Assembly (NCBI GenBank): GCA_965637545.1
Contig: OZ281496.1
Location: 10,230,001 to 10,294,000 of the forward strand
Direction: 5' to 3'
Origin: Phallusia mammillata
Lineage: Eukaryota
Length of the DNA: 64,000 bases
The position numbers and the translations under genes are program-made. Below are positions 55,523-64,000 of the stretch, piece by piece. The stretch's first letter is position 1; the number at the start of each line of letters is the position of its first letter. The notes below the pieces were generated by a model. That model had not been told where the DNA came from, searched no databases, and worked only from the letters and a program-made list of their open reading frames with translations.

Positions 55523-55725
55523 AGTAGTAGTGGGTCAAGTGGCCGCGGTGCGGCGTCTTTTTTGAGGCGGAATCAATGTGTTTTTGAGAAGAGGAGGCGG
55601 TAGCTTTTTTTGGGGGGTGTATAGAGGAGGTGGGTCTTTACACACGTACAAACACCCCCTCCTCATGTACTTTCCCTATGTTTTTAAGTAGGCGTAGCCT
55701 TCCTCTCAACGGTCGGGTGTTGGGG

Positions 55726-55731
55726 TATAAA
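55726..55731 (+). promoter_or_regulatory. TATA box upstream of the Maverick plus-strand gene block
   Basis: GGGGTATAAA ~40 nt before the ATPase start. A mirror TATAAAAA lies on the minus strand at 62667-62674 before the ORFan. Confidence 0.45.
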
Positions 55732-55771
55732 TTTCATTGAATGGGGTTGCTTTGTTTCATTTTTCTTGACT

Positions 55772-56368
55772 ATGGAATTTCTTCATCCATTTACTTGCGT
55801 TGTGGCCGGTCCAACCAGTTGCGGTAAAACGTATTTTGTTGCTCGTTTGATAAAGGAAAAGCAAGTCTCTCCCCCACCCGATCGAGTTGTTTGGTGTTAT
55901 GGAGAGTGGCAAGCAGCGTATGAGGGTATAAGTGGTGTGGATTTTGTAAAGGGCTTGGCCACGGATTTGAATCCCGACGAACGAACGCTGCTGGTCATTG
56001 ATGATTTGATGAGCGAGTGTGACAAAAGTGTAACAAACCTATTTACCAAGGGAAGTCACCACAAAAATGTCAGTGTCATCTACATTGTCCAAAACCTTTT
56101 TGATAAAGGCAAAGAGCACCGCACAATAAGCTTGAACGCTCATTACTTGGTGGTATTTAAAAATCCGAGAGACTCTTCGCAAATCATTCACCTGGCAAAG
56201 CAAGTGTATCCCGGGCGCTCGCGTGTTGTGCAAGAAGCATATAGTGACGCTACATCCAAGCCACACGGTTATTTGTTACTTGACTTCAAGCAGTCAACCC
56301 CGGATAAGTTTCGGCTGCGGAGCAACGTCTTTCGCGGTGAGACACCGTTTATCTACTTCCCCAAGTGA
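55772..56368 (+). CDS. Genome-packaging ATPase (A32/FtsK-HerA family)
   Basis: Walker A GPTSCGKT, Walker B LLVIDDLM, SHH..VSVIYIVQN, ISLNAHYLVVFKNPRD, PHGYLLLD. Confidence 0.92.
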   Translation: MEFLHPFTCVVAGPTSCGKTYFVARLIKEKQVSPPPDRVVWCYGEWQAAYEGISGVDFVKGLATDLNPDERTLLVIDDLMSECDKSVTNLFTKGSHHKNVSVIYIVQNLFDKGKEHRTISLNAHYLVVFKNPRDSSQIIHLAKQVYPGRSRVVQEAYSDATSKPHGYLLLDFKQSTPDKFRLRSNVFRGETPFIYFPK

Positions 56369-56370
56369 AA

Positions 56371-56712
56371 ATGTCCAAACGCCTCCGCAGACAAGCTTCT
56401 TTGCTGACAACTCTCTGCACCGCTAAGCCTAGACTTGTGCGGACGATTATAAAAGGAGCGGACCACGACTTAATAAATTCCATTTGTGAATGCTGTCACA
56501 ATGTTTTAAAGGGGAACGTAAACCTCTCTCCGAGTGAGCGTGGAAAACTTAAGCGTTACAAAAACGGTCTTCGGGAACTTGGAAAGAAGTCTACCAGTCT
56601 AAAGAGAAAACGCAAAATAATTCAACGTGGTGGATTTTTGTCTGCGTTATTGGGGCCTTTGATCGGGACTGTGATTCCGGCAATTGCTGGACTGTTCACT
56701 GGAGGAAAGTGA
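56371..56712 (+). CDS. Small basic Polinton protein, putative core protein with hydrophobic C-terminal peptide
   Basis: DLINSICECCHNVLKGNV and a K/R-rich stretch, then QRGG|FLSALLGPLIGTVIPAIAGLF. Confidence 0.8.
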   Translation: MSKRLRRQASLLTTLCTAKPRLVRTIIKGADHDLINSICECCHNVLKGNVNLSPSERGKLKRYKNGLRELGKKSTSLKRKRKIIQRGGFLSALLGPLIGTVIPAIAGLFTGGK

Positions 56713-56743
56713 AAATAAAATAAAAAACACATAACAAATTTCA

Positions 56744-57400
56744 ATGGAAAACGTTCAAAAACTCGCTTTGGTTGATCCACGAGTATTAAAATCCCTTCAA
56801 CAAAAAACTCCTACCCAATCCACGCCTATTGAAAATGCAATGAGTGATTTGGATAAAGTAATGAACGGAATAGTGAAAGAACCAGGGGATTTGGAAAGCA
56901 AAGTGAAGTTGTACAACCAAGCTCTGCAACGATACCGCTTTTACAACAGCGAACTTATCAACAAACCAATGGAAATTTCTATTGTCGAAAAGGAAAAACC
57001 CGGCAGTGAAGAATCAAATCTGGAGGAAAAGCGAAAACAGGAGATAGTTGCCCACATCATCGCCTCTACGCCCAAGACATTCAAACGGAAAGCCGAGCGT
57101 GTAATGGGATTGATACGAGATAATCCTAATATCGACTTTCAAGCGACTGGCCAGCTAGTATTGAAAGGTCAAACGATCGAAAATAGCAACATTGAAGACT
57201 TGGTGCACGATATTATACGCAAGAGAAAAAAGACGGGCGGCCCCATCGGGTGGGATCAGTTTATGTTGGCTTTGACAGAAGCCAATGCTCCTAAGACATT
57301 GGTCGGTGATAAAAGGGAGGGACAGGGCATCTTCCAGGTGCCAGTCGCTTCACCTCGCAAACGTAGCACACGTCTTGCAAAACGATGGGTCGCTCTGTAG
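56744..57400 (+). CDS. Conserved Polinton protein of unknown function, 218 aa
   Basis: KLYNQALQRYRFY and PIGWDQFMLALTEANAP..LVG motifs. Position between ATPase/core genes and the integrase. Confidence 0.75.
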   Translation: MENVQKLALVDPRVLKSLQQKTPTQSTPIENAMSDLDKVMNGIVKEPGDLESKVKLYNQALQRYRFYNSELINKPMEISIVEKEKPGSEESNLEEKRKQEIVAHIIASTPKTFKRKAERVMGLIRDNPNIDFQATGQLVLKGQTIENSNIEDLVHDIIRKRKKTGGPIGWDQFMLALTEANAPKTLVGDKREGQGIFQVPVASPRKRSTRLAKRWVAL

Positions 57401-61801: not shown

Positions 61802-61889
61802 CATCATCTCATTTAAAATACAACAAACAAACAATCTTCCATCCAGTTTATTTTCACTGTACAGCACATTACACAACATAGCGTAATCA

Positions 61890-61963
61890 AATAAACCTCC
61901 CTTCCCCCCCTTTTTTTTTTTCCAAAGTTTTCTCCCTGTGGGAGAAAACCAGGGGAAAAAAAT

Positions 61964-62011
<48 letters not shown>
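61890..62011. terminator. Convergent 3' region: AATAAA, perfect hairpin and (GA)21 microsatellite
   Basis: AATAAA 61890-61895. GTTTTCTCCC-TGT-GGGAGAAAAC at 61927-61949. (GA)n 61970-62011. Lies between the protease stop (+) and the ORFan stop (-). Confidence 0.5.
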
Positions 62012-62014
<3 letters not shown>

Positions 62015-62015
<1 letters not shown>

Positions 62016-62611
62016 TAGGTGCTTTCATCAGAGTCGGCAAGTGTTATGACACCTTGCGGGGACAGTTTAGATGGTGCCGTGCTTTCAAAGAGGGATTCTA
62101 TAGTGGACAGCTGTTCCCGGACCATGGTGTCAATCAACCCCAGCTTTGCCTGATAGAATTCGTAGTGTTCGGCATTCTCAATTATCGGTCGTAGATAGGC
62201 TTCAGGAGCAAATACCGTTTTGAATTTAAAGTTTATTATAATATTATCCACTGCAACATCTTCGGTCATGGACTTAATGCGATTGGCAATAAGACACTTG
62301 TCGTCCTCATCACAAGTGGCCCAGTACACGATCTGCATTCGACAGTAACCATCTTCTTCGGGTTTTGAATACACTAACACGTATGGCGACTCGGGAAATA
62401 GCACTGAAGCTAGCTCACACAGCTCTTCATCCCCAAAGAACTGTCCTCTGCCGAATTTAACTGACAAAGTACCGCATCGCAGTCTAGTTTGCGTGGTCGA
62501 CTTGCTTCGCTTGCGTCGAAGTTCTGCAAACATTTCTCTTGTTTTTTCAGCTCTCATCTCGCAGTCCAGTGGGCAAGACTCTAAGCTGGGACGTTTTCTT
62601 GTCGATGGCAT
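62015..62611 (-). CDS. Maverick accessory ORFan, 198 aa
   Basis: ATG-initiated uninterrupted ORF with its own TATA box. N-terminal NLS-like RKRP and RRKRSK; acidic C-terminus VITLADSDEST. Confidence 0.75.
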
Positions 62612-63025
62612 TGTTGAAGTAGTTTCTTTTGCTTTGTAGTGTGGGTGAAACGGTTTATCTTTCGGGTTTTTATAGCATTAGAGATGAAAAGAAAGAAGTT
62701 AAAACAGGAAACATGACGTGTTTAGAGGAGGTATCATGATCCATGGAAGAGGTGGAGGAGGATGAGAAGGGGAGATGAGGCGGAGGGGGAAAAAATAAGT
62801 AGAATGTTGTCTGTGAGAGTGTATGAATTAGTGGCACCCAATGGTTTGGGGTTGTGAGAGAACTCCGATTGATTAAAGGGAGGGGGTTGTAAAGGTTCTG
62901 TTTGCACTCGGCCTTAGATTAAAAAAACAAACTCTTTTCACTCCAACACCACTCTTTTATTACATGGAATAAAAGGCGAAACACAAACAAACATAGACAC
63001 AAAAAGCAAAGTAAACAGTCGTGAA

Positions 63026-64000
63026 TTAAATGTCCAGTGGCTCTGTTGAAATACCATCGGGTAAGACTTTACGTTTTGGATAAAAATAACTGATACCATC
63101 GCGGGTTTGGTTGTATGTGTAAACTCTTTGATTCACACTTCGAAAGCCCGTGTTCACTCCACGGCCATTTACCTTTGTTTTTAGAACATCGAGGTAAGTT
63201 TGGAGGGACAGGGGGTTTTGTGCCTTGCGGATCCCTTTACACACTTGCTTATCGGTGGGGCCAGAGCAATAATAGGTTTTAGAGGTCAGAGCAACAATAG
63301 CATCCCCACTCCACTCGATTTTAAACAGACCTGGCGTGCGAAGGTCAAAGCGGTGGCGTTCACGACAACACACATCCTGTACAAAAGGCAATTGGGCAAC
63401 ACGACACTCAACAAAAAGAGACTGATGGCGATCACAGGCTTCAGCAGGAAACCAGAGGTGAAAGTTATTGTAAAAATCTCGCCGAAGTTCAGGGCGAATA
63501 ACAGCGTCGAGCGAAGAAGCAGAAAGCGCCATGTACAACGAGTCCGTGTCTGTTTGCACTAATTGAAAATCGGAGCGGTCTACATAGCGGTCAATACATT
63601 CATAATAAAATTCAAGCATACGGAGTTTGGCATATTGATATACAAAAAATCCACATTGAATAGGGAGATTGTGAACAACTTTGGCTTTCCTTGACTGAAC
63701 CTCGAAAAGGTCCTCATCAAGTTCTGCCAATGACTCAAATGTGGTTTTGTTAATTGATTTCATAGCTTTTTCACCATTGCAATAAGTGATATTTCTGTGG
63801 AGGAGCTTATTACACAATAATTTCCCATAACTCGCATTTCCGACAAGTTTCATGGAGTCGCCAATAATCTTTTTATCGGGGTGAACGTCACCCAGTCGAC
63901 GAGCTGCGGAAACATCTTTACCGAATGAAGCAAAACAAGCATTTGGTTCATAACAAATTACACAGTAAATATGGGTTACAACAAGTTCGTGTTTTAAATA
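63026..64000 (-). CDS. Protein-primed family B DNA polymerase, C-terminal part (5' end beyond window)
   Basis: Frame open from 64000 (YLKHELVVTH...DSMKLVGNASYGK). Motifs KxxxNxxYG, YAKLRMLEFYY, QTDTDSLY, PGLFK.E, LTSKTY, KGI. Confidence 0.95.
   Translation of the reverse strand, partial: YLKHELVVTHIYCVICYEPNACFASFGKDVSAARRLGDVHPDKKIIGDSMKLVGNASYGKLLCNKLLHRNITYCNGEKAMKSINKTTFESLAELDEDLFEVQSRKAKVVHNLPIQCGFFVYQYAKLRMLEFYYECIDRYVDRSDFQLVQTDTDSLYMALSASSLDAVIRPELRRDFYNNFHLWFPAEACDRHQSLFVECRVAQLPFVQDVCCRERHRFDLRTPGLFKIEWSGDAIVALTSKTYYCSGPTDKQVCKGIRKAQNPLSLQTYLDVLKTKVNGRGVNTGFRSVNQRVYTYNQTRDGISYFYPKRKVLPDGISTEPLDI

What the first reader, a model, noticed from the sequence alone, without database searches (positions are those of the whole stretch)
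55523..64000. Apparently intact endogenous Maverick/Polinton virus with a full virion toolkit
Seen: every ORF inside the window (ATPase, two basic core-like proteins, a conserved unknown protein, integrase, small TM protein, penton, MCP, protease, ORFan, pPolB C-half) has no stop or frameshift. Almost every other element in the window is decayed. Known: Polintons encode jelly-roll capsids, a packaging ATPase and a maturation protease and are thought to form virions. Inference: this copy is a recent insertion and may be reactivatable.
Basis: partly seen in the sequence, partly recalled or inferred. Interest (0 to 1): 0.8.

Follow-up and report, generated by a model that had tools for sequence, protein, structure and literature searches.

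The report
Open-framed Maverick provirus, window-truncated
The last 8.5 kb of the window is the left two-thirds of a Maverick/Polinton virus-like element inserted into a host zinc-finger gene; every gene visible is open and well conserved, but three quarters of its polymerase and its right end lie outside the window, so it is a normal young-looking member of a known family, not a proven intact one.

Summary
From 55523 to 64000 there are eleven stop-free reading frames, and all score best in their own frame. Six were identified by tools: an A32/IVa2-type packaging ATPase, an rve integrase with a chromodomain, a penton (fold match to the mavirus and adenovirus pentons), a double jelly-roll major capsid protein, an adenain-type protease with its catalytic residues in place, and the C-terminal end of a protein-primed family-B polymerase.

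The left end is well defined. A host C2H2 84-bp array stops at 55522, and the element starts with AGT x3, the end-motif published for vertebrate Mavericks.

- The polymerase piece is the last quarter or so (324 of about 1,390 residues), not half.
- The rest of the window is not all decayed. It holds an open 803-aa transposase-like ORF.

"Intact" and "recent" cannot be settled here, because the right repeat, the target duplication and about 1,050 polymerase codons lie outside the window. If the copy were unconstrained, 2,449 open codons imply at most about 0.2-0.5% divergence since insertion.

This is a new member of a known kind, in a host that is probably an ascidian. A decayed second copy also abuts a zinc-finger array, which is a side lead.

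The parts
55140..55522 (+). Host flank: a truncated C2H2 zinc-finger array (84-bp units) that reads towards the element. It is the insertion target. The last 6 bp (55517-55522) are the expected target-site duplication.
   Evidence: Repeat family D4 and the 84-bp tandem array end exactly at 55522. The array is paralogous to those at 32.5, 35.3 and 40 kb, and shares upstream sequence with them (54398-54465 resembles 37317-37384). Sequence read.
55523..55771 (.). Left terminal non-coding region. It starts with AGT x3 and has a TATAAA at 55726, 46 nt before the ATPase ATG. It is presumed to contain the left terminal inverted repeat.
   Evidence: Sequence. The (AGT)2 5' end-motif and 6-bp TSD are reported for vertebrate Mavericks (PMC8097293). 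Signal positions. No partner arm lies inside the window.
55772..56368 (+). Packaging ATPase (198 aa), FtsK/HerA-A32/IVa2 type. Walker A at residues 13-20, Walker B at 73-78.
   Evidence: Pfam Adeno_IVa2 scores 22 bits against a cut-off of 21, and Pox_A32 scores 18.6 bits, below its cut-off. Motifs. Best codon frame.
56371..56712 (+). Basic 113-aa protein (net charge +20 over the 115-codon reading from 56365) with a hydrophobic C-terminal segment. Candidate core or membrane-active protein.
   Evidence: Composition. There is a weak Adeno_PX match at residues 87-109 (E 0.055, below cut-off). A homologous stretch sits in the decayed second copy (E 1.6e-9).
56744..57400 (+). 218-aa protein of unknown function, conserved between the two Maverick copies in the window.
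   Evidence: No Pfam, PHROG or PDB match above chance. tblastn finds it in the second copy at E 8e-5. Best codon frame.
57385..58446 (+). Integrase (353 aa): an rve catalytic core plus a C-terminal chromodomain. D136 and E171 align with the second Asp and the Glu of the foamy-virus integrase core. D74 is the inferred first Asp.
   Evidence: Pfam rve 9.1e-16 and Chromo 8.2e-8. PDB integrase cores at 1e-7 and HP1 chromodomains at 5e-4. Positions.
58394..58723 (+). 109-aa ORF with a strongly hydrophobic segment (residues 37-55). It overlaps the integrase end and the penton start. This is the weakest gene call.
   Evidence: Open frame. Hydropathy 2.85. The codon score is only marginally best in frame. 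No Pfam hit. No homologue search was run.
58659..59612 (+). Penton (vertex) protein, 317 aa, a single jelly-roll with a disordered insert of about 70 residues (residues ~105-175).
   Evidence: 66 homologues of 200-430 aa. The AlphaFold model has pLDDT 85.5. Foldseek finds the mavirus penton at 3.7e-10, and adenovirus penton base and Sputnik penton near 1e-6. The protein keeps 24 of 26 columns that are at least 90% conserved.
59614..60048 (+). Basic 144-aa protein (net +20) with a Lys/Arg-rich tail. It sits where 'PW' lies between the minor and major capsid genes in vertebrate Mavericks.
   Evidence: Composition. No family hit. Gene order compared with PMC8097293.
60045..61355 (+). Major capsid protein, 436 aa, double jelly-roll.
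   Evidence: 1,991 homologues of about 433-439 aa at 99-100% coverage. The best is 77% identical, from Phallusia mammillata and named 'F54H12.2-like'. The model has pLDDT 86.3 and pTM 0.86. Foldseek matches the PBCV-1, Sputnik, mavirus and iridovirus MCPs at 1e-15 to 1e-12, and a bracovirus-borne protein at 39% identity, 1e-37. Relative P0007 hits Pfam DJR-like_dom. The protein keeps 99 of 109 columns that are at least 90% conserved and has no missing columns.
61355..61801 (+). Adenain-type cysteine protease (148 aa). His54, Asp70, Gln100 and Cys107 align with the adenain active-site residues. Numbering follows the translation from 61352.
   Evidence: Pfam Peptidase_C5 at 1.2e-5, 25.5 bits against a cut-off of 21.3. 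Alignments to adenain 1avp and ASFV S273R. Positions.
61802..62014 (.). Convergent intergenic region. It holds AATAAA at 61890 (+) and 61852 (-), an inverted repeat at 61909-61967 and a (GA)21 run at 61970-62011.
62015..62611 (-). 198-aa acidic ORF of unknown function downstream of the polymerase. A TATAAA lies 63 nt before its ATG.
   Evidence: Open, and best in its own codon frame. No Pfam or PHROG hit. The only PDB hit is chance-level. No LxCxE or CxxC motif.
62612..63025 (.). Intergenic region between the polymerase stop and the 198-aa ORF. On the - strand it holds AATAAA at 62961 and TATAAA at 62674.
63026..64000 (-). C-terminal 324 codons plus the stop of the protein-primed family-B DNA polymerase. 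The frame is open to the window edge. About 1,050 codons lie beyond 64000.
   Evidence: 4,570 relatives, 525 of them below 1e-30. The fragment aligns to the last ~324 residues of 1,300-1,400-aa proteins. In 54 relatives of at least 1,200 aa, the median length is 1,390 with 1,050 residues upstream of the match. Relatives P0192, P0196 and P0203 hit Pfam DNA_pol_B_2 upstream of that part. The fragment keeps 43 of 44 columns that are at least 90% conserved. Polymerase motif positions.

Best explanation
Window 55523-64000 is the left ~8.5 kb of an endogenous Maverick/Polinton (adintovirus-like) dsDNA element. By projection from the polymerase length of relatives, the whole element is roughly 12 kb or more. 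It is integrated inside the zinc-finger array of a host C2H2 gene, in an animal genome that is probably an ascidian.

Shown: a 250-bp terminal region starts with the Maverick AGT-repeat end-motif. A tightly packed + strand block follows, in the order ATPase, two small proteins, chromodomain integrase, small hydrophobic ORF, penton, basic protein, double jelly-roll MCP, adenain-like protease. It has a TATA box in front and a poly(A) signal behind. It converges on a - strand block made of the polymerase and a 198-aa ORF. Every frame in the window is open, the catalytic residues are in place, and conserved columns are kept about as well as in relatives.

Inferred from the family: the polymerase copies the linear genome by protein priming at the terminal repeats. 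The ATPase packs the genome into an icosahedral shell of MCP trimers and penton pentamers. The protease matures basic core or precursor proteins. The integrase inserts the genome with a 6-bp duplication, its chromodomain steering it to particular chromatin.

Most likely this copy is a young insertion from a lineage that was under purifying selection until it integrated. Whether the copy is complete cannot be told from this window.
For: ORFs and frames. Pfam: Adeno_IVa2, rve + Chromo, Peptidase_C5. MCP: 1,991 full-length homologues, model pLDDT 86, DJR capsid folds. Penton. Polymerase. Active-site alignments. Conserved-column counts. Left junction and AGT x3: with PMC8097293. The gene order integrase, minor capsid, PW-position protein, MCP, protease matches the published vertebrate module. 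GC is 0.43-0.48 inside the element against about 0.36 outside. Neutral-decay bound of K at most 0.002-0.005 for 2,449 open codons. Host hint: the best MCP hit is from Phallusia mammillata, and the best hits for the unrelated 803-aa transposase are from Ciona intestinalis.
Against: Only the last ~23% of the polymerase is visible. The right terminal repeat and the target duplication are outside the window. No copy more than 77% identical was seen in the protein collection, so copy number and age are unmeasured. CpG observed/expected is about 0.96 inside against 0.87 outside, which gives no age signal. Five ORFs (113, 218, 109, 144 and 198 aa) have no recognised family. The ATPase Pfam hit is only just above its cut-off. 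The host assignment rests on two mobile-element proteins, not on host genes.
Confidence: 0.85

Rival explanations
1. The copy is defective outside the window. The unseen three quarters of the polymerase, or the right terminal repeat, is truncated or broken, so this is a well-preserved partial element and not an intact one.
For: Most catalogued Mavericks are degraded. In vertebrates, 134 were judged intact and 2,166 lacked discernible terminal repeats (PMC8097293). The window itself holds a second, heavily decayed copy. About 3.2 kb of coding sequence plus the right terminus is unobserved.
Against: All 2,449 visible codons are open, which implies very little decay. At the same rate, a point lesion in the remaining ~1,050 codons is unlikely. 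The visible polymerase part keeps 43 of 44 highly conserved columns.
Confidence: 0.2
2. The insertion is old, and its frames are kept open by selection on the host (co-option, for instance as a defence or a source of capsid-like proteins), not by youth.
For: Open frames alone cannot separate youth from constraint. The MCP keeps slightly fewer conserved columns than the median relative (0.91 against 0.96, rank 56 of 62).
Against: Ten or eleven genes of different function, including integrase, protease and polymerase, are all open and tightly packed, with their own TATA and poly(A) signals. Host co-option usually preserves one gene. The lower MCP share is expected, because this protein and its Phallusia relative are outliers to the other 60 rows.
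Confidence: 0.05
3. The left boundary is wrong and the zinc-finger array belongs to the element. For example, it could be a terminal-repeat copy of a zinc-finger-bearing polymerase N-terminus. That would also explain why the decayed copy has a zinc-finger array at the same side and distance.
For: The C2H2 pattern was found in 22 of the 150 polymerase relatives, all of them 1,344 aa or longer, at or near the N-terminus; in several of them it is repeated at the 28-aa period (Pfam zf-C2H2 in P0191). Both Maverick copies in the window have a C2H2 array 250-300 bp from the ATPase start, reading inward.
Against: The array is paralogous to arrays at 32.5 and 35.3 kb that have no Maverick genes beside them, and it shares upstream non-coding sequence with them. 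Its similarity to the polymerase N-termini is only generic C2H2 similarity, and no better than that of the other arrays. AGT x3 sits exactly where the 84-bp periodicity stops. GC rises only after the junction.
Confidence: 0.06
4. The junction is an assembly chimera: a free viral genome or a contaminant was joined to host sequence.
For: The base composition differs from the flank. No second junction is visible. Free-ended adintovirus contigs are known in animal read sets (PMC8502044).
Against: The break falls cleanly inside a periodic host array, at the element's canonical end-motif, as a real integration would. A second, decayed copy shows that this genome has been colonised by the family.
Confidence: 0.04

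Closest known systems
'Intact' vertebrate Mavericks (Barreat and Katzourakis 2021, PMC8097293)
   Same: The core gene set is the same: pPolB, ATPase, integrase, minor and major capsid proteins, and protease. The order integrase, minor capsid, small protein, MCP, protease is the same. The AGT-repeat 5' end-motif is the same. The ORFs are intronless and tightly packed. The projected size is near the lower end of the published 12.7-24.6 kb range.
   Different: The host is probably an ascidian, not a vertebrate. Here the ATPase heads the capsid/integrase strand instead of sitting with the polymerase. The polymerase converges on that block. There are extra small ORFs (113, 218, 109 and 198 aa). The published intactness criteria (terminal repeats, 6-bp duplication, full polymerase) cannot be checked here.
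Adintoviruses (Starrett et al. 2021, PMC8502044)
   Same: Adenovirus-like hexon, penton and adenain, plus an FtsK-type ATPase, an rve integrase with a chromodomain, and PolB. Relatives of this polymerase hit Pfam PF03175, as the 'Alpha' class does. One small protein has a weak pX-like C-terminus.
   Different: No PLA2, gasdermin or cupiennin-like domain was detected. No LxCxE/CxxC 'Oncoid' motif combination was found in the 198-aa ORF, and no LxCxE in any ORF. The OTU-like polymerase N-terminus is outside the window.
Mavirus and Sputnik virophage capsids (PDB 6g44, 6g42, 3j26)
   Same: Same folds: mavirus supplies the best solved match for the penton, and mavirus and Sputnik rank second and third for the MCP, behind a PBCV-1 capsid chain.
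   Different: Sequence identity is only 9-13%. Virophages depend on giant viruses of protists. This element sits in an animal genome and belongs to a large animal-associated protein family.
Maverick-derived protein carried in Cotesia sesamiae Mombasa bracovirus (UniProt R9XLG5), and C. elegans F54H12.2-like proteins
   Same: The MCP is 39% identical to the bracovirus-borne protein, by far the best viral-library hit. Sources name its closest relatives 'F54H12.2-like'.
   Different: Those are annotated only as uncharacterised proteins, in insects, nematodes and molluscs. The nearest relative here, at 77%, is from an ascidian.

Membership tests
Maverick/Polinton | Protein-primed family-B DNA polymerase | tested here: met
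   The 324-aa C-terminal part matches the ends of 1,300-1,400-aa relatives (E down to 2e-100). Three of those relatives hit Pfam DNA_pol_B_2. Only about 23% of the gene is in the window.
Maverick/Polinton | Retrovirus-like (rve, DDE) integrase | tested here: met
   Pfam rve 9.1e-16 and Chromo 8.2e-8. The second Asp and the Glu align to the foamy-virus integrase.
Maverick/Polinton | Double jelly-roll major capsid protein | tested here: met
   Model pLDDT 86.3. Foldseek probability 1.00 to the PBCV-1, Sputnik, mavirus and iridovirus MCPs.
Maverick/Polinton | Single jelly-roll penton (minor capsid) protein | tested here: met
   Model pLDDT 85.5. Mavirus penton at 3.7e-10 and adenovirus penton base.
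Maverick/Polinton | FtsK/HerA (A32/IVa2-like) packaging ATPase | tested here: met
   Adeno_IVa2 scores 22 bits against a cut-off of 21, and Pox_A32 is below its cut-off. Walker A and B are present. The support is marginal but consistent.
Maverick/Polinton | Adenain/Ulp1-like cysteine protease | tested here: met
   Peptidase_C5 scores 25.5 bits against a cut-off of 21.3. His, Asp, Gln and Cys align with adenain.
Maverick/Polinton | Terminal inverted repeats with conserved end-motifs | tested here: inconclusive
   The left end starts with AGT x3, the published 5' motif. The right arm is outside the window, and no partner lies inside it.
Maverick/Polinton | 6-bp target-site duplication | not testable with these tools
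   The left flank's 6 bp is 55517-55522. The right junction lies beyond 64000, and fetching it is barred.
'Intact' Maverick in the sense of PMC8097293 | All core ORFs uninterrupted, plus terminal repeats, plus the duplication | tested here: inconclusive
   All ORFs in the window are uninterrupted. About 1,050 polymerase codons and the right terminus are unseen.
Adintovirus virion-module classes (PMC8502044) | PLA2X (Alpha-type) or GasderminX/cupiennin (Beta-type) accessory gene | tested here: not met
   No such Pfam family at E up to 0.1 (0.01 for the 109-aa ORF) in any of the eleven ORFs. Only a weak Adeno_PX-like C-terminus in the 113-aa protein.
Adintovirus | OTU-like N-terminal domain on PolB | not testable with these tools
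   The polymerase N-terminus is outside the window.

The most novel reading that the evidence does not exclude
This Maverick lineage may have a real insertion preference for C2H2 zinc-finger arrays, perhaps through its chromodomain integrase reading the chromatin of such arrays. Two independent, differently aged copies in one 64-kb window both sit inside or against a zinc-finger array, in the same relative orientation and 250-300 bp from the ATPase start. The younger copy may come from a virus lineage still circulating in ascidians.
Probability: 0.12. Interest if true: 0.55.

Novelty: new member of a known kind. Interest (0 to 1): 0.3.

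Why it matters
Mavericks/Polintons are viewed as integrating dsDNA viruses of animals. Well-preserved copies are the material for studying their gene content, host range over time and integration behaviour. This copy adds a probably ascidian example, with a precisely mapped left junction and a complete, well-conserved morphogenesis module. It does not change what is known: open-framed copies are already catalogued in many animals. The possible zinc-finger-array association, and the C2H2 fingers seen at the N-termini of many related polymerases, are cheap to test by sequence surveys. 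They would be the more interesting outcome.

Tried and rejected
- PHROGs gave only generic transposase hits for the integrase.
- PDB sequence searches were uninformative or chance-level for the polymerase piece, the ATPase, the 198-aa ORF and the 218-aa ORF.
- Bacterial-type promoter and terminator scans were at shuffle level, as expected for a eukaryotic element.
- Rfam and ARAGORN found only one host tRNA-Phe.
- CpG observed/expected was tried as an age proxy and rejected. The genome is not CpG-depleted overall (0.87 outside, 0.96 inside).
- A search for a terminal-repeat partner or another DNA-level copy inside the window found none.
- The idea that the intact and decayed copies descend from one duplicated 'zinc-finger plus Maverick' locus was rejected. 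The terminal non-coding parts do not align, and the junctions fall at different places in the 84-bp unit.
- The idea that the flanking array is a copy of a polymerase N-terminus has no specific support.
- The 'Oncoid' motif test on the 198-aa ORF was negative.

Full report
**1. Observation**

The window has no N runs. Between 55523 and 64000 there are nine stop-free frames on the + strand and two on the - strand.

| Gene | Coordinates | Strand |
|---|---|---|
| ATPase | 55772-56368 | + |
| 113-aa basic protein | 56371-56712 | + |
| 218-aa protein | 56744-57400 | + |
| Integrase | 57385-58446 | + |
| 109-aa hydrophobic ORF | 58394-58723 | + |
| Penton | 58659-59612 | + |
| 144-aa basic protein | 59614-60048 | + |
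| MCP | 60045-61355 | + |
| Protease | 61355-61801 | + |
| 198-aa ORF | 62015-62611 | - |
| Polymerase end | 63026 to window edge | - |

- Neighbouring + strand genes are separated by 31 nt at most or overlap by up to 65 nt.
- Coding sequence fills 89% of the region.
- Under a leave-one-out codon model, each ORF scores best in its own frame. The margin is small only for the 109-aa ORF.
- GC rises from about 0.36 to 0.43-0.48 inside the region.

**2. What the genes are**

Pfam places three of the genes:
- The ATPase is in Adeno_IVa2, at 22 bits against a cut-off of 21. Pox_A32 is below its cut-off.
- The integrase is in rve (9.1e-16) plus Chromo (8.2e-8).
- The protease is in Peptidase_C5, at 25.5 bits against 21.3.

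The active sites look complete:
- Alignment to adenain puts His54, Asp70, Gln100 and Cys107 on the active-site residues.
- Alignment to the foamy-virus integrase core puts D136 and E171 on the second Asp and the Glu. D74 is the inferred first Asp, within the rve match.
- The ATPase has Walker A and B motifs.

The 436-aa protein is the major capsid protein:
- It has 1,991 homologues of nearly identical length. The best is 77% identical, from the ascidian Phallusia mammillata. Others are from molluscs.
- Its model has pLDDT 86.3 and pTM 0.86. It matches the double jelly-roll capsid proteins of PBCV-1, Sputnik, mavirus and iridoviruses.
- It also matches a bracovirus-borne protein at 39% identity.
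- A relative hits Pfam DJR-like_dom.

The 317-aa protein is the penton:
- It has 66 homologues, and its model has pLDDT 85.5.
- The model matches the mavirus, adenovirus and Sputnik pentons.
- It carries a disordered insert of about 70 residues that relatives lack.

The - strand frame at the window edge is the polymerase end:
- It matches 4,570 proteins. It aligns to the last ~324 residues of proteins of 1,300-1,400 aa.
- Three of those relatives carry Pfam DNA_pol_B_2 further upstream.
- Among 54 relatives of at least 1,200 aa, the median length is 1,390 with 1,050 residues upstream of the matched part. The window therefore holds the last quarter of the gene, not half.

The five remaining ORFs have no recognised family:
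- The 113-aa and 144-aa proteins are strongly basic, each with net charge +20.
- The 113-aa protein has a weak pX-like C-terminus.
- The 113-aa and 218-aa proteins have recognisable counterparts in a second, decayed copy in the window. This supports them as real genes.

**3. State of preservation**

| Protein | Columns at least 90% conserved among relatives | Kept by the window protein | Source |
|---|---|---|---|
| MCP | 109 | 99 | |
| Penton | 26 | 24 | |
| Polymerase piece | 44 | 43 | |

- No widely occupied column is missing.
- The MCP share is low within its alignment (rank 56 of 62). That is expected, because this protein and its Phallusia relative are outliers to the other rows.
- If the copy had been drifting without constraint, 2,449 open codons imply a divergence of at most about 0.002-0.005. 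This is a 95% bound, and it depends on the assumed indel rate.
- This fits a young insertion, but it is an inference. CpG content gives no age signal.
- No protein more than 77% identical to the MCP was returned from the protein collection, which holds 5.8 billion clusters. Copy number is therefore unknown.

**4. Boundaries and context**

- An 84-bp-periodic C2H2 zinc-finger array at 55140-55522 stops exactly at 55522.
- The next bases are AGT x3. This is the 5' end-motif reported for vertebrate Mavericks, which also make 6-bp duplications (PMC8097293).
- The array is a host gene. It is paralogous to arrays at 32.5, 35.3 and 40 kb and shares upstream non-coding sequence with them.
- Eukaryotic signals sit where expected: TATAAA 46 nt before the ATPase ATG, AATAAA 89 nt after the protease stop, and a TATAAA/AATAAA pair on the - strand for the 198-aa ORF and the polymerase.
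- The order integrase, penton, small basic protein, MCP, protease equals the published vertebrate module.
- The host is probably an ascidian. The best relatives of the MCP (Phallusia) and of an unrelated 803-aa transposase-like ORF (Ciona intestinalis, 42%) are both ascidian. Both are mobile-element proteins, so this is only a hint. Nothing suggests human sequence.

**5. Mechanism**

Shown: the gene set, the active-site residues, the folds and the junction.

Inferred from the family (PMC8097293, PMC8502044):
- Replication is protein-primed from the terminal repeats.
- The genome is packaged by the ATPase into a shell of MCP trimers and penton pentamers.
- The protease matures the particle. The two basic proteins are candidate core proteins or precursors.
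- The integrase inserts the genome, and the chromodomain possibly biases the site.

**6. Rivals**

- The unseen part is broken (about 0.2).
- The insertion is old and held open by host selection (about 0.05).
- The zinc-finger array belongs to the element (about 0.06).
- The junction is an assembly chimera (about 0.04).

Evidence for each is given in its own section.

**7. Side finding**

- A decayed Maverick remnant lies within about 39108-39651 on the - strand. It covers the ATPase start, the 113-aa gene and the start of the 218-aa gene.
- The ATPase has lost most of its length. The 113-aa homologue carries two in-frame stops. The 218-aa homologue is split over two frames and then truncated. 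Everything downstream is missing.
- It too lies 250-300 bp from a truncated C2H2 array (39948-40464), in the same relative orientation as the intact copy.
- The terminal non-coding parts do not align and the junctions differ within the 84-bp unit. These look like independent insertions.
- The arrays fill about 4.5% of the window, so the coincidence is of order 1e-3. That estimate is post hoc.
- Separately, 22 of 150 polymerase relatives carry C2H2 finger patterns at or near their N-termini. The similarity to the window's arrays is only generic.

**8. Comparison and novelty**

All six hallmark genes of Mavericks/Polintons are present. The terminal repeats and the duplication cannot be checked. 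This is a new member of a known kind. Open-framed copies are already described in vertebrates (134 elements) and in many invertebrate data sets.

Noticed in passing
window 39108-39651 (- strand), with the C2H2 array at 39948-40464: A second, decayed Maverick remnant covering the ATPase start, the 113-aa gene and the start of the 218-aa gene. The ATPase is mostly deleted, there are two in-frame stops in the 113-aa homologue and at least one frameshift in the 218-aa homologue, and everything downstream is missing. Like the intact copy, it lies 250-300 bp from a truncated zinc-finger array in the same relative orientation.
   Followed up: partly
proteins P0191-P0331 (relatives of the polymerase): 22 of 150 polymerase relatives (all 22 are 1,344 aa or longer) carry one to three C2H2 zinc-finger patterns at or near the N-terminus, in several at the canonical 28-aa period. 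Many also have a single jaz-like finger near residue 350. The N-terminus of this window's polymerase is not visible.
   Followed up: partly
window 18418-20826 (- strand); 16000-24000: An open 803-aa ORF with N-terminal C2H2-like motifs. Its relatives carry the Transposase_21, DUF4218 and Plavaka Pfam families, and the best match is 42% identical, from Ciona intestinalis. The surrounding 8 kb has CpG observed/expected of about 0.5, against about 0.9 elsewhere. This is an apparently intact transposase gene, contrary to 'everything else is decayed'.
   Followed up: partly
window 32480-33151, 35295-36197, 39948-40464, 55140-55522: A cluster of paralogous C2H2 zinc-finger arrays (84-bp units) with shared upstream segments, i.e. 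tandemly duplicated zinc-finger genes. Two arrays still have open frames of 171-205 aa.
   Followed up: partly
window 7268-10151 (+); 48043-49690 (-): Host receptor genes. One is a 614-aa exon with eight LDL-receptor class A repeats, followed by a rhodopsin-type 7TM exon. The other is an adhesion-type GPCR on the other strand (GPS motif plus secretin-family 7TM).
   Followed up: no
window 25846-25921 (-); 53803-53909 and 54152-54248: One tRNA-Phe gene. Two 97-nt repeats 85% alike share sequence with it, so they look like tRNA-derived SINE-like repeats. They lie 1.3-1.7 kb left of the element.
   Followed up: no
window 61909-62011: An inverted repeat (28-nt arms) and a perfect (GA)21 microsatellite sit exactly between the two convergent gene blocks of the element.
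   Followed up: no
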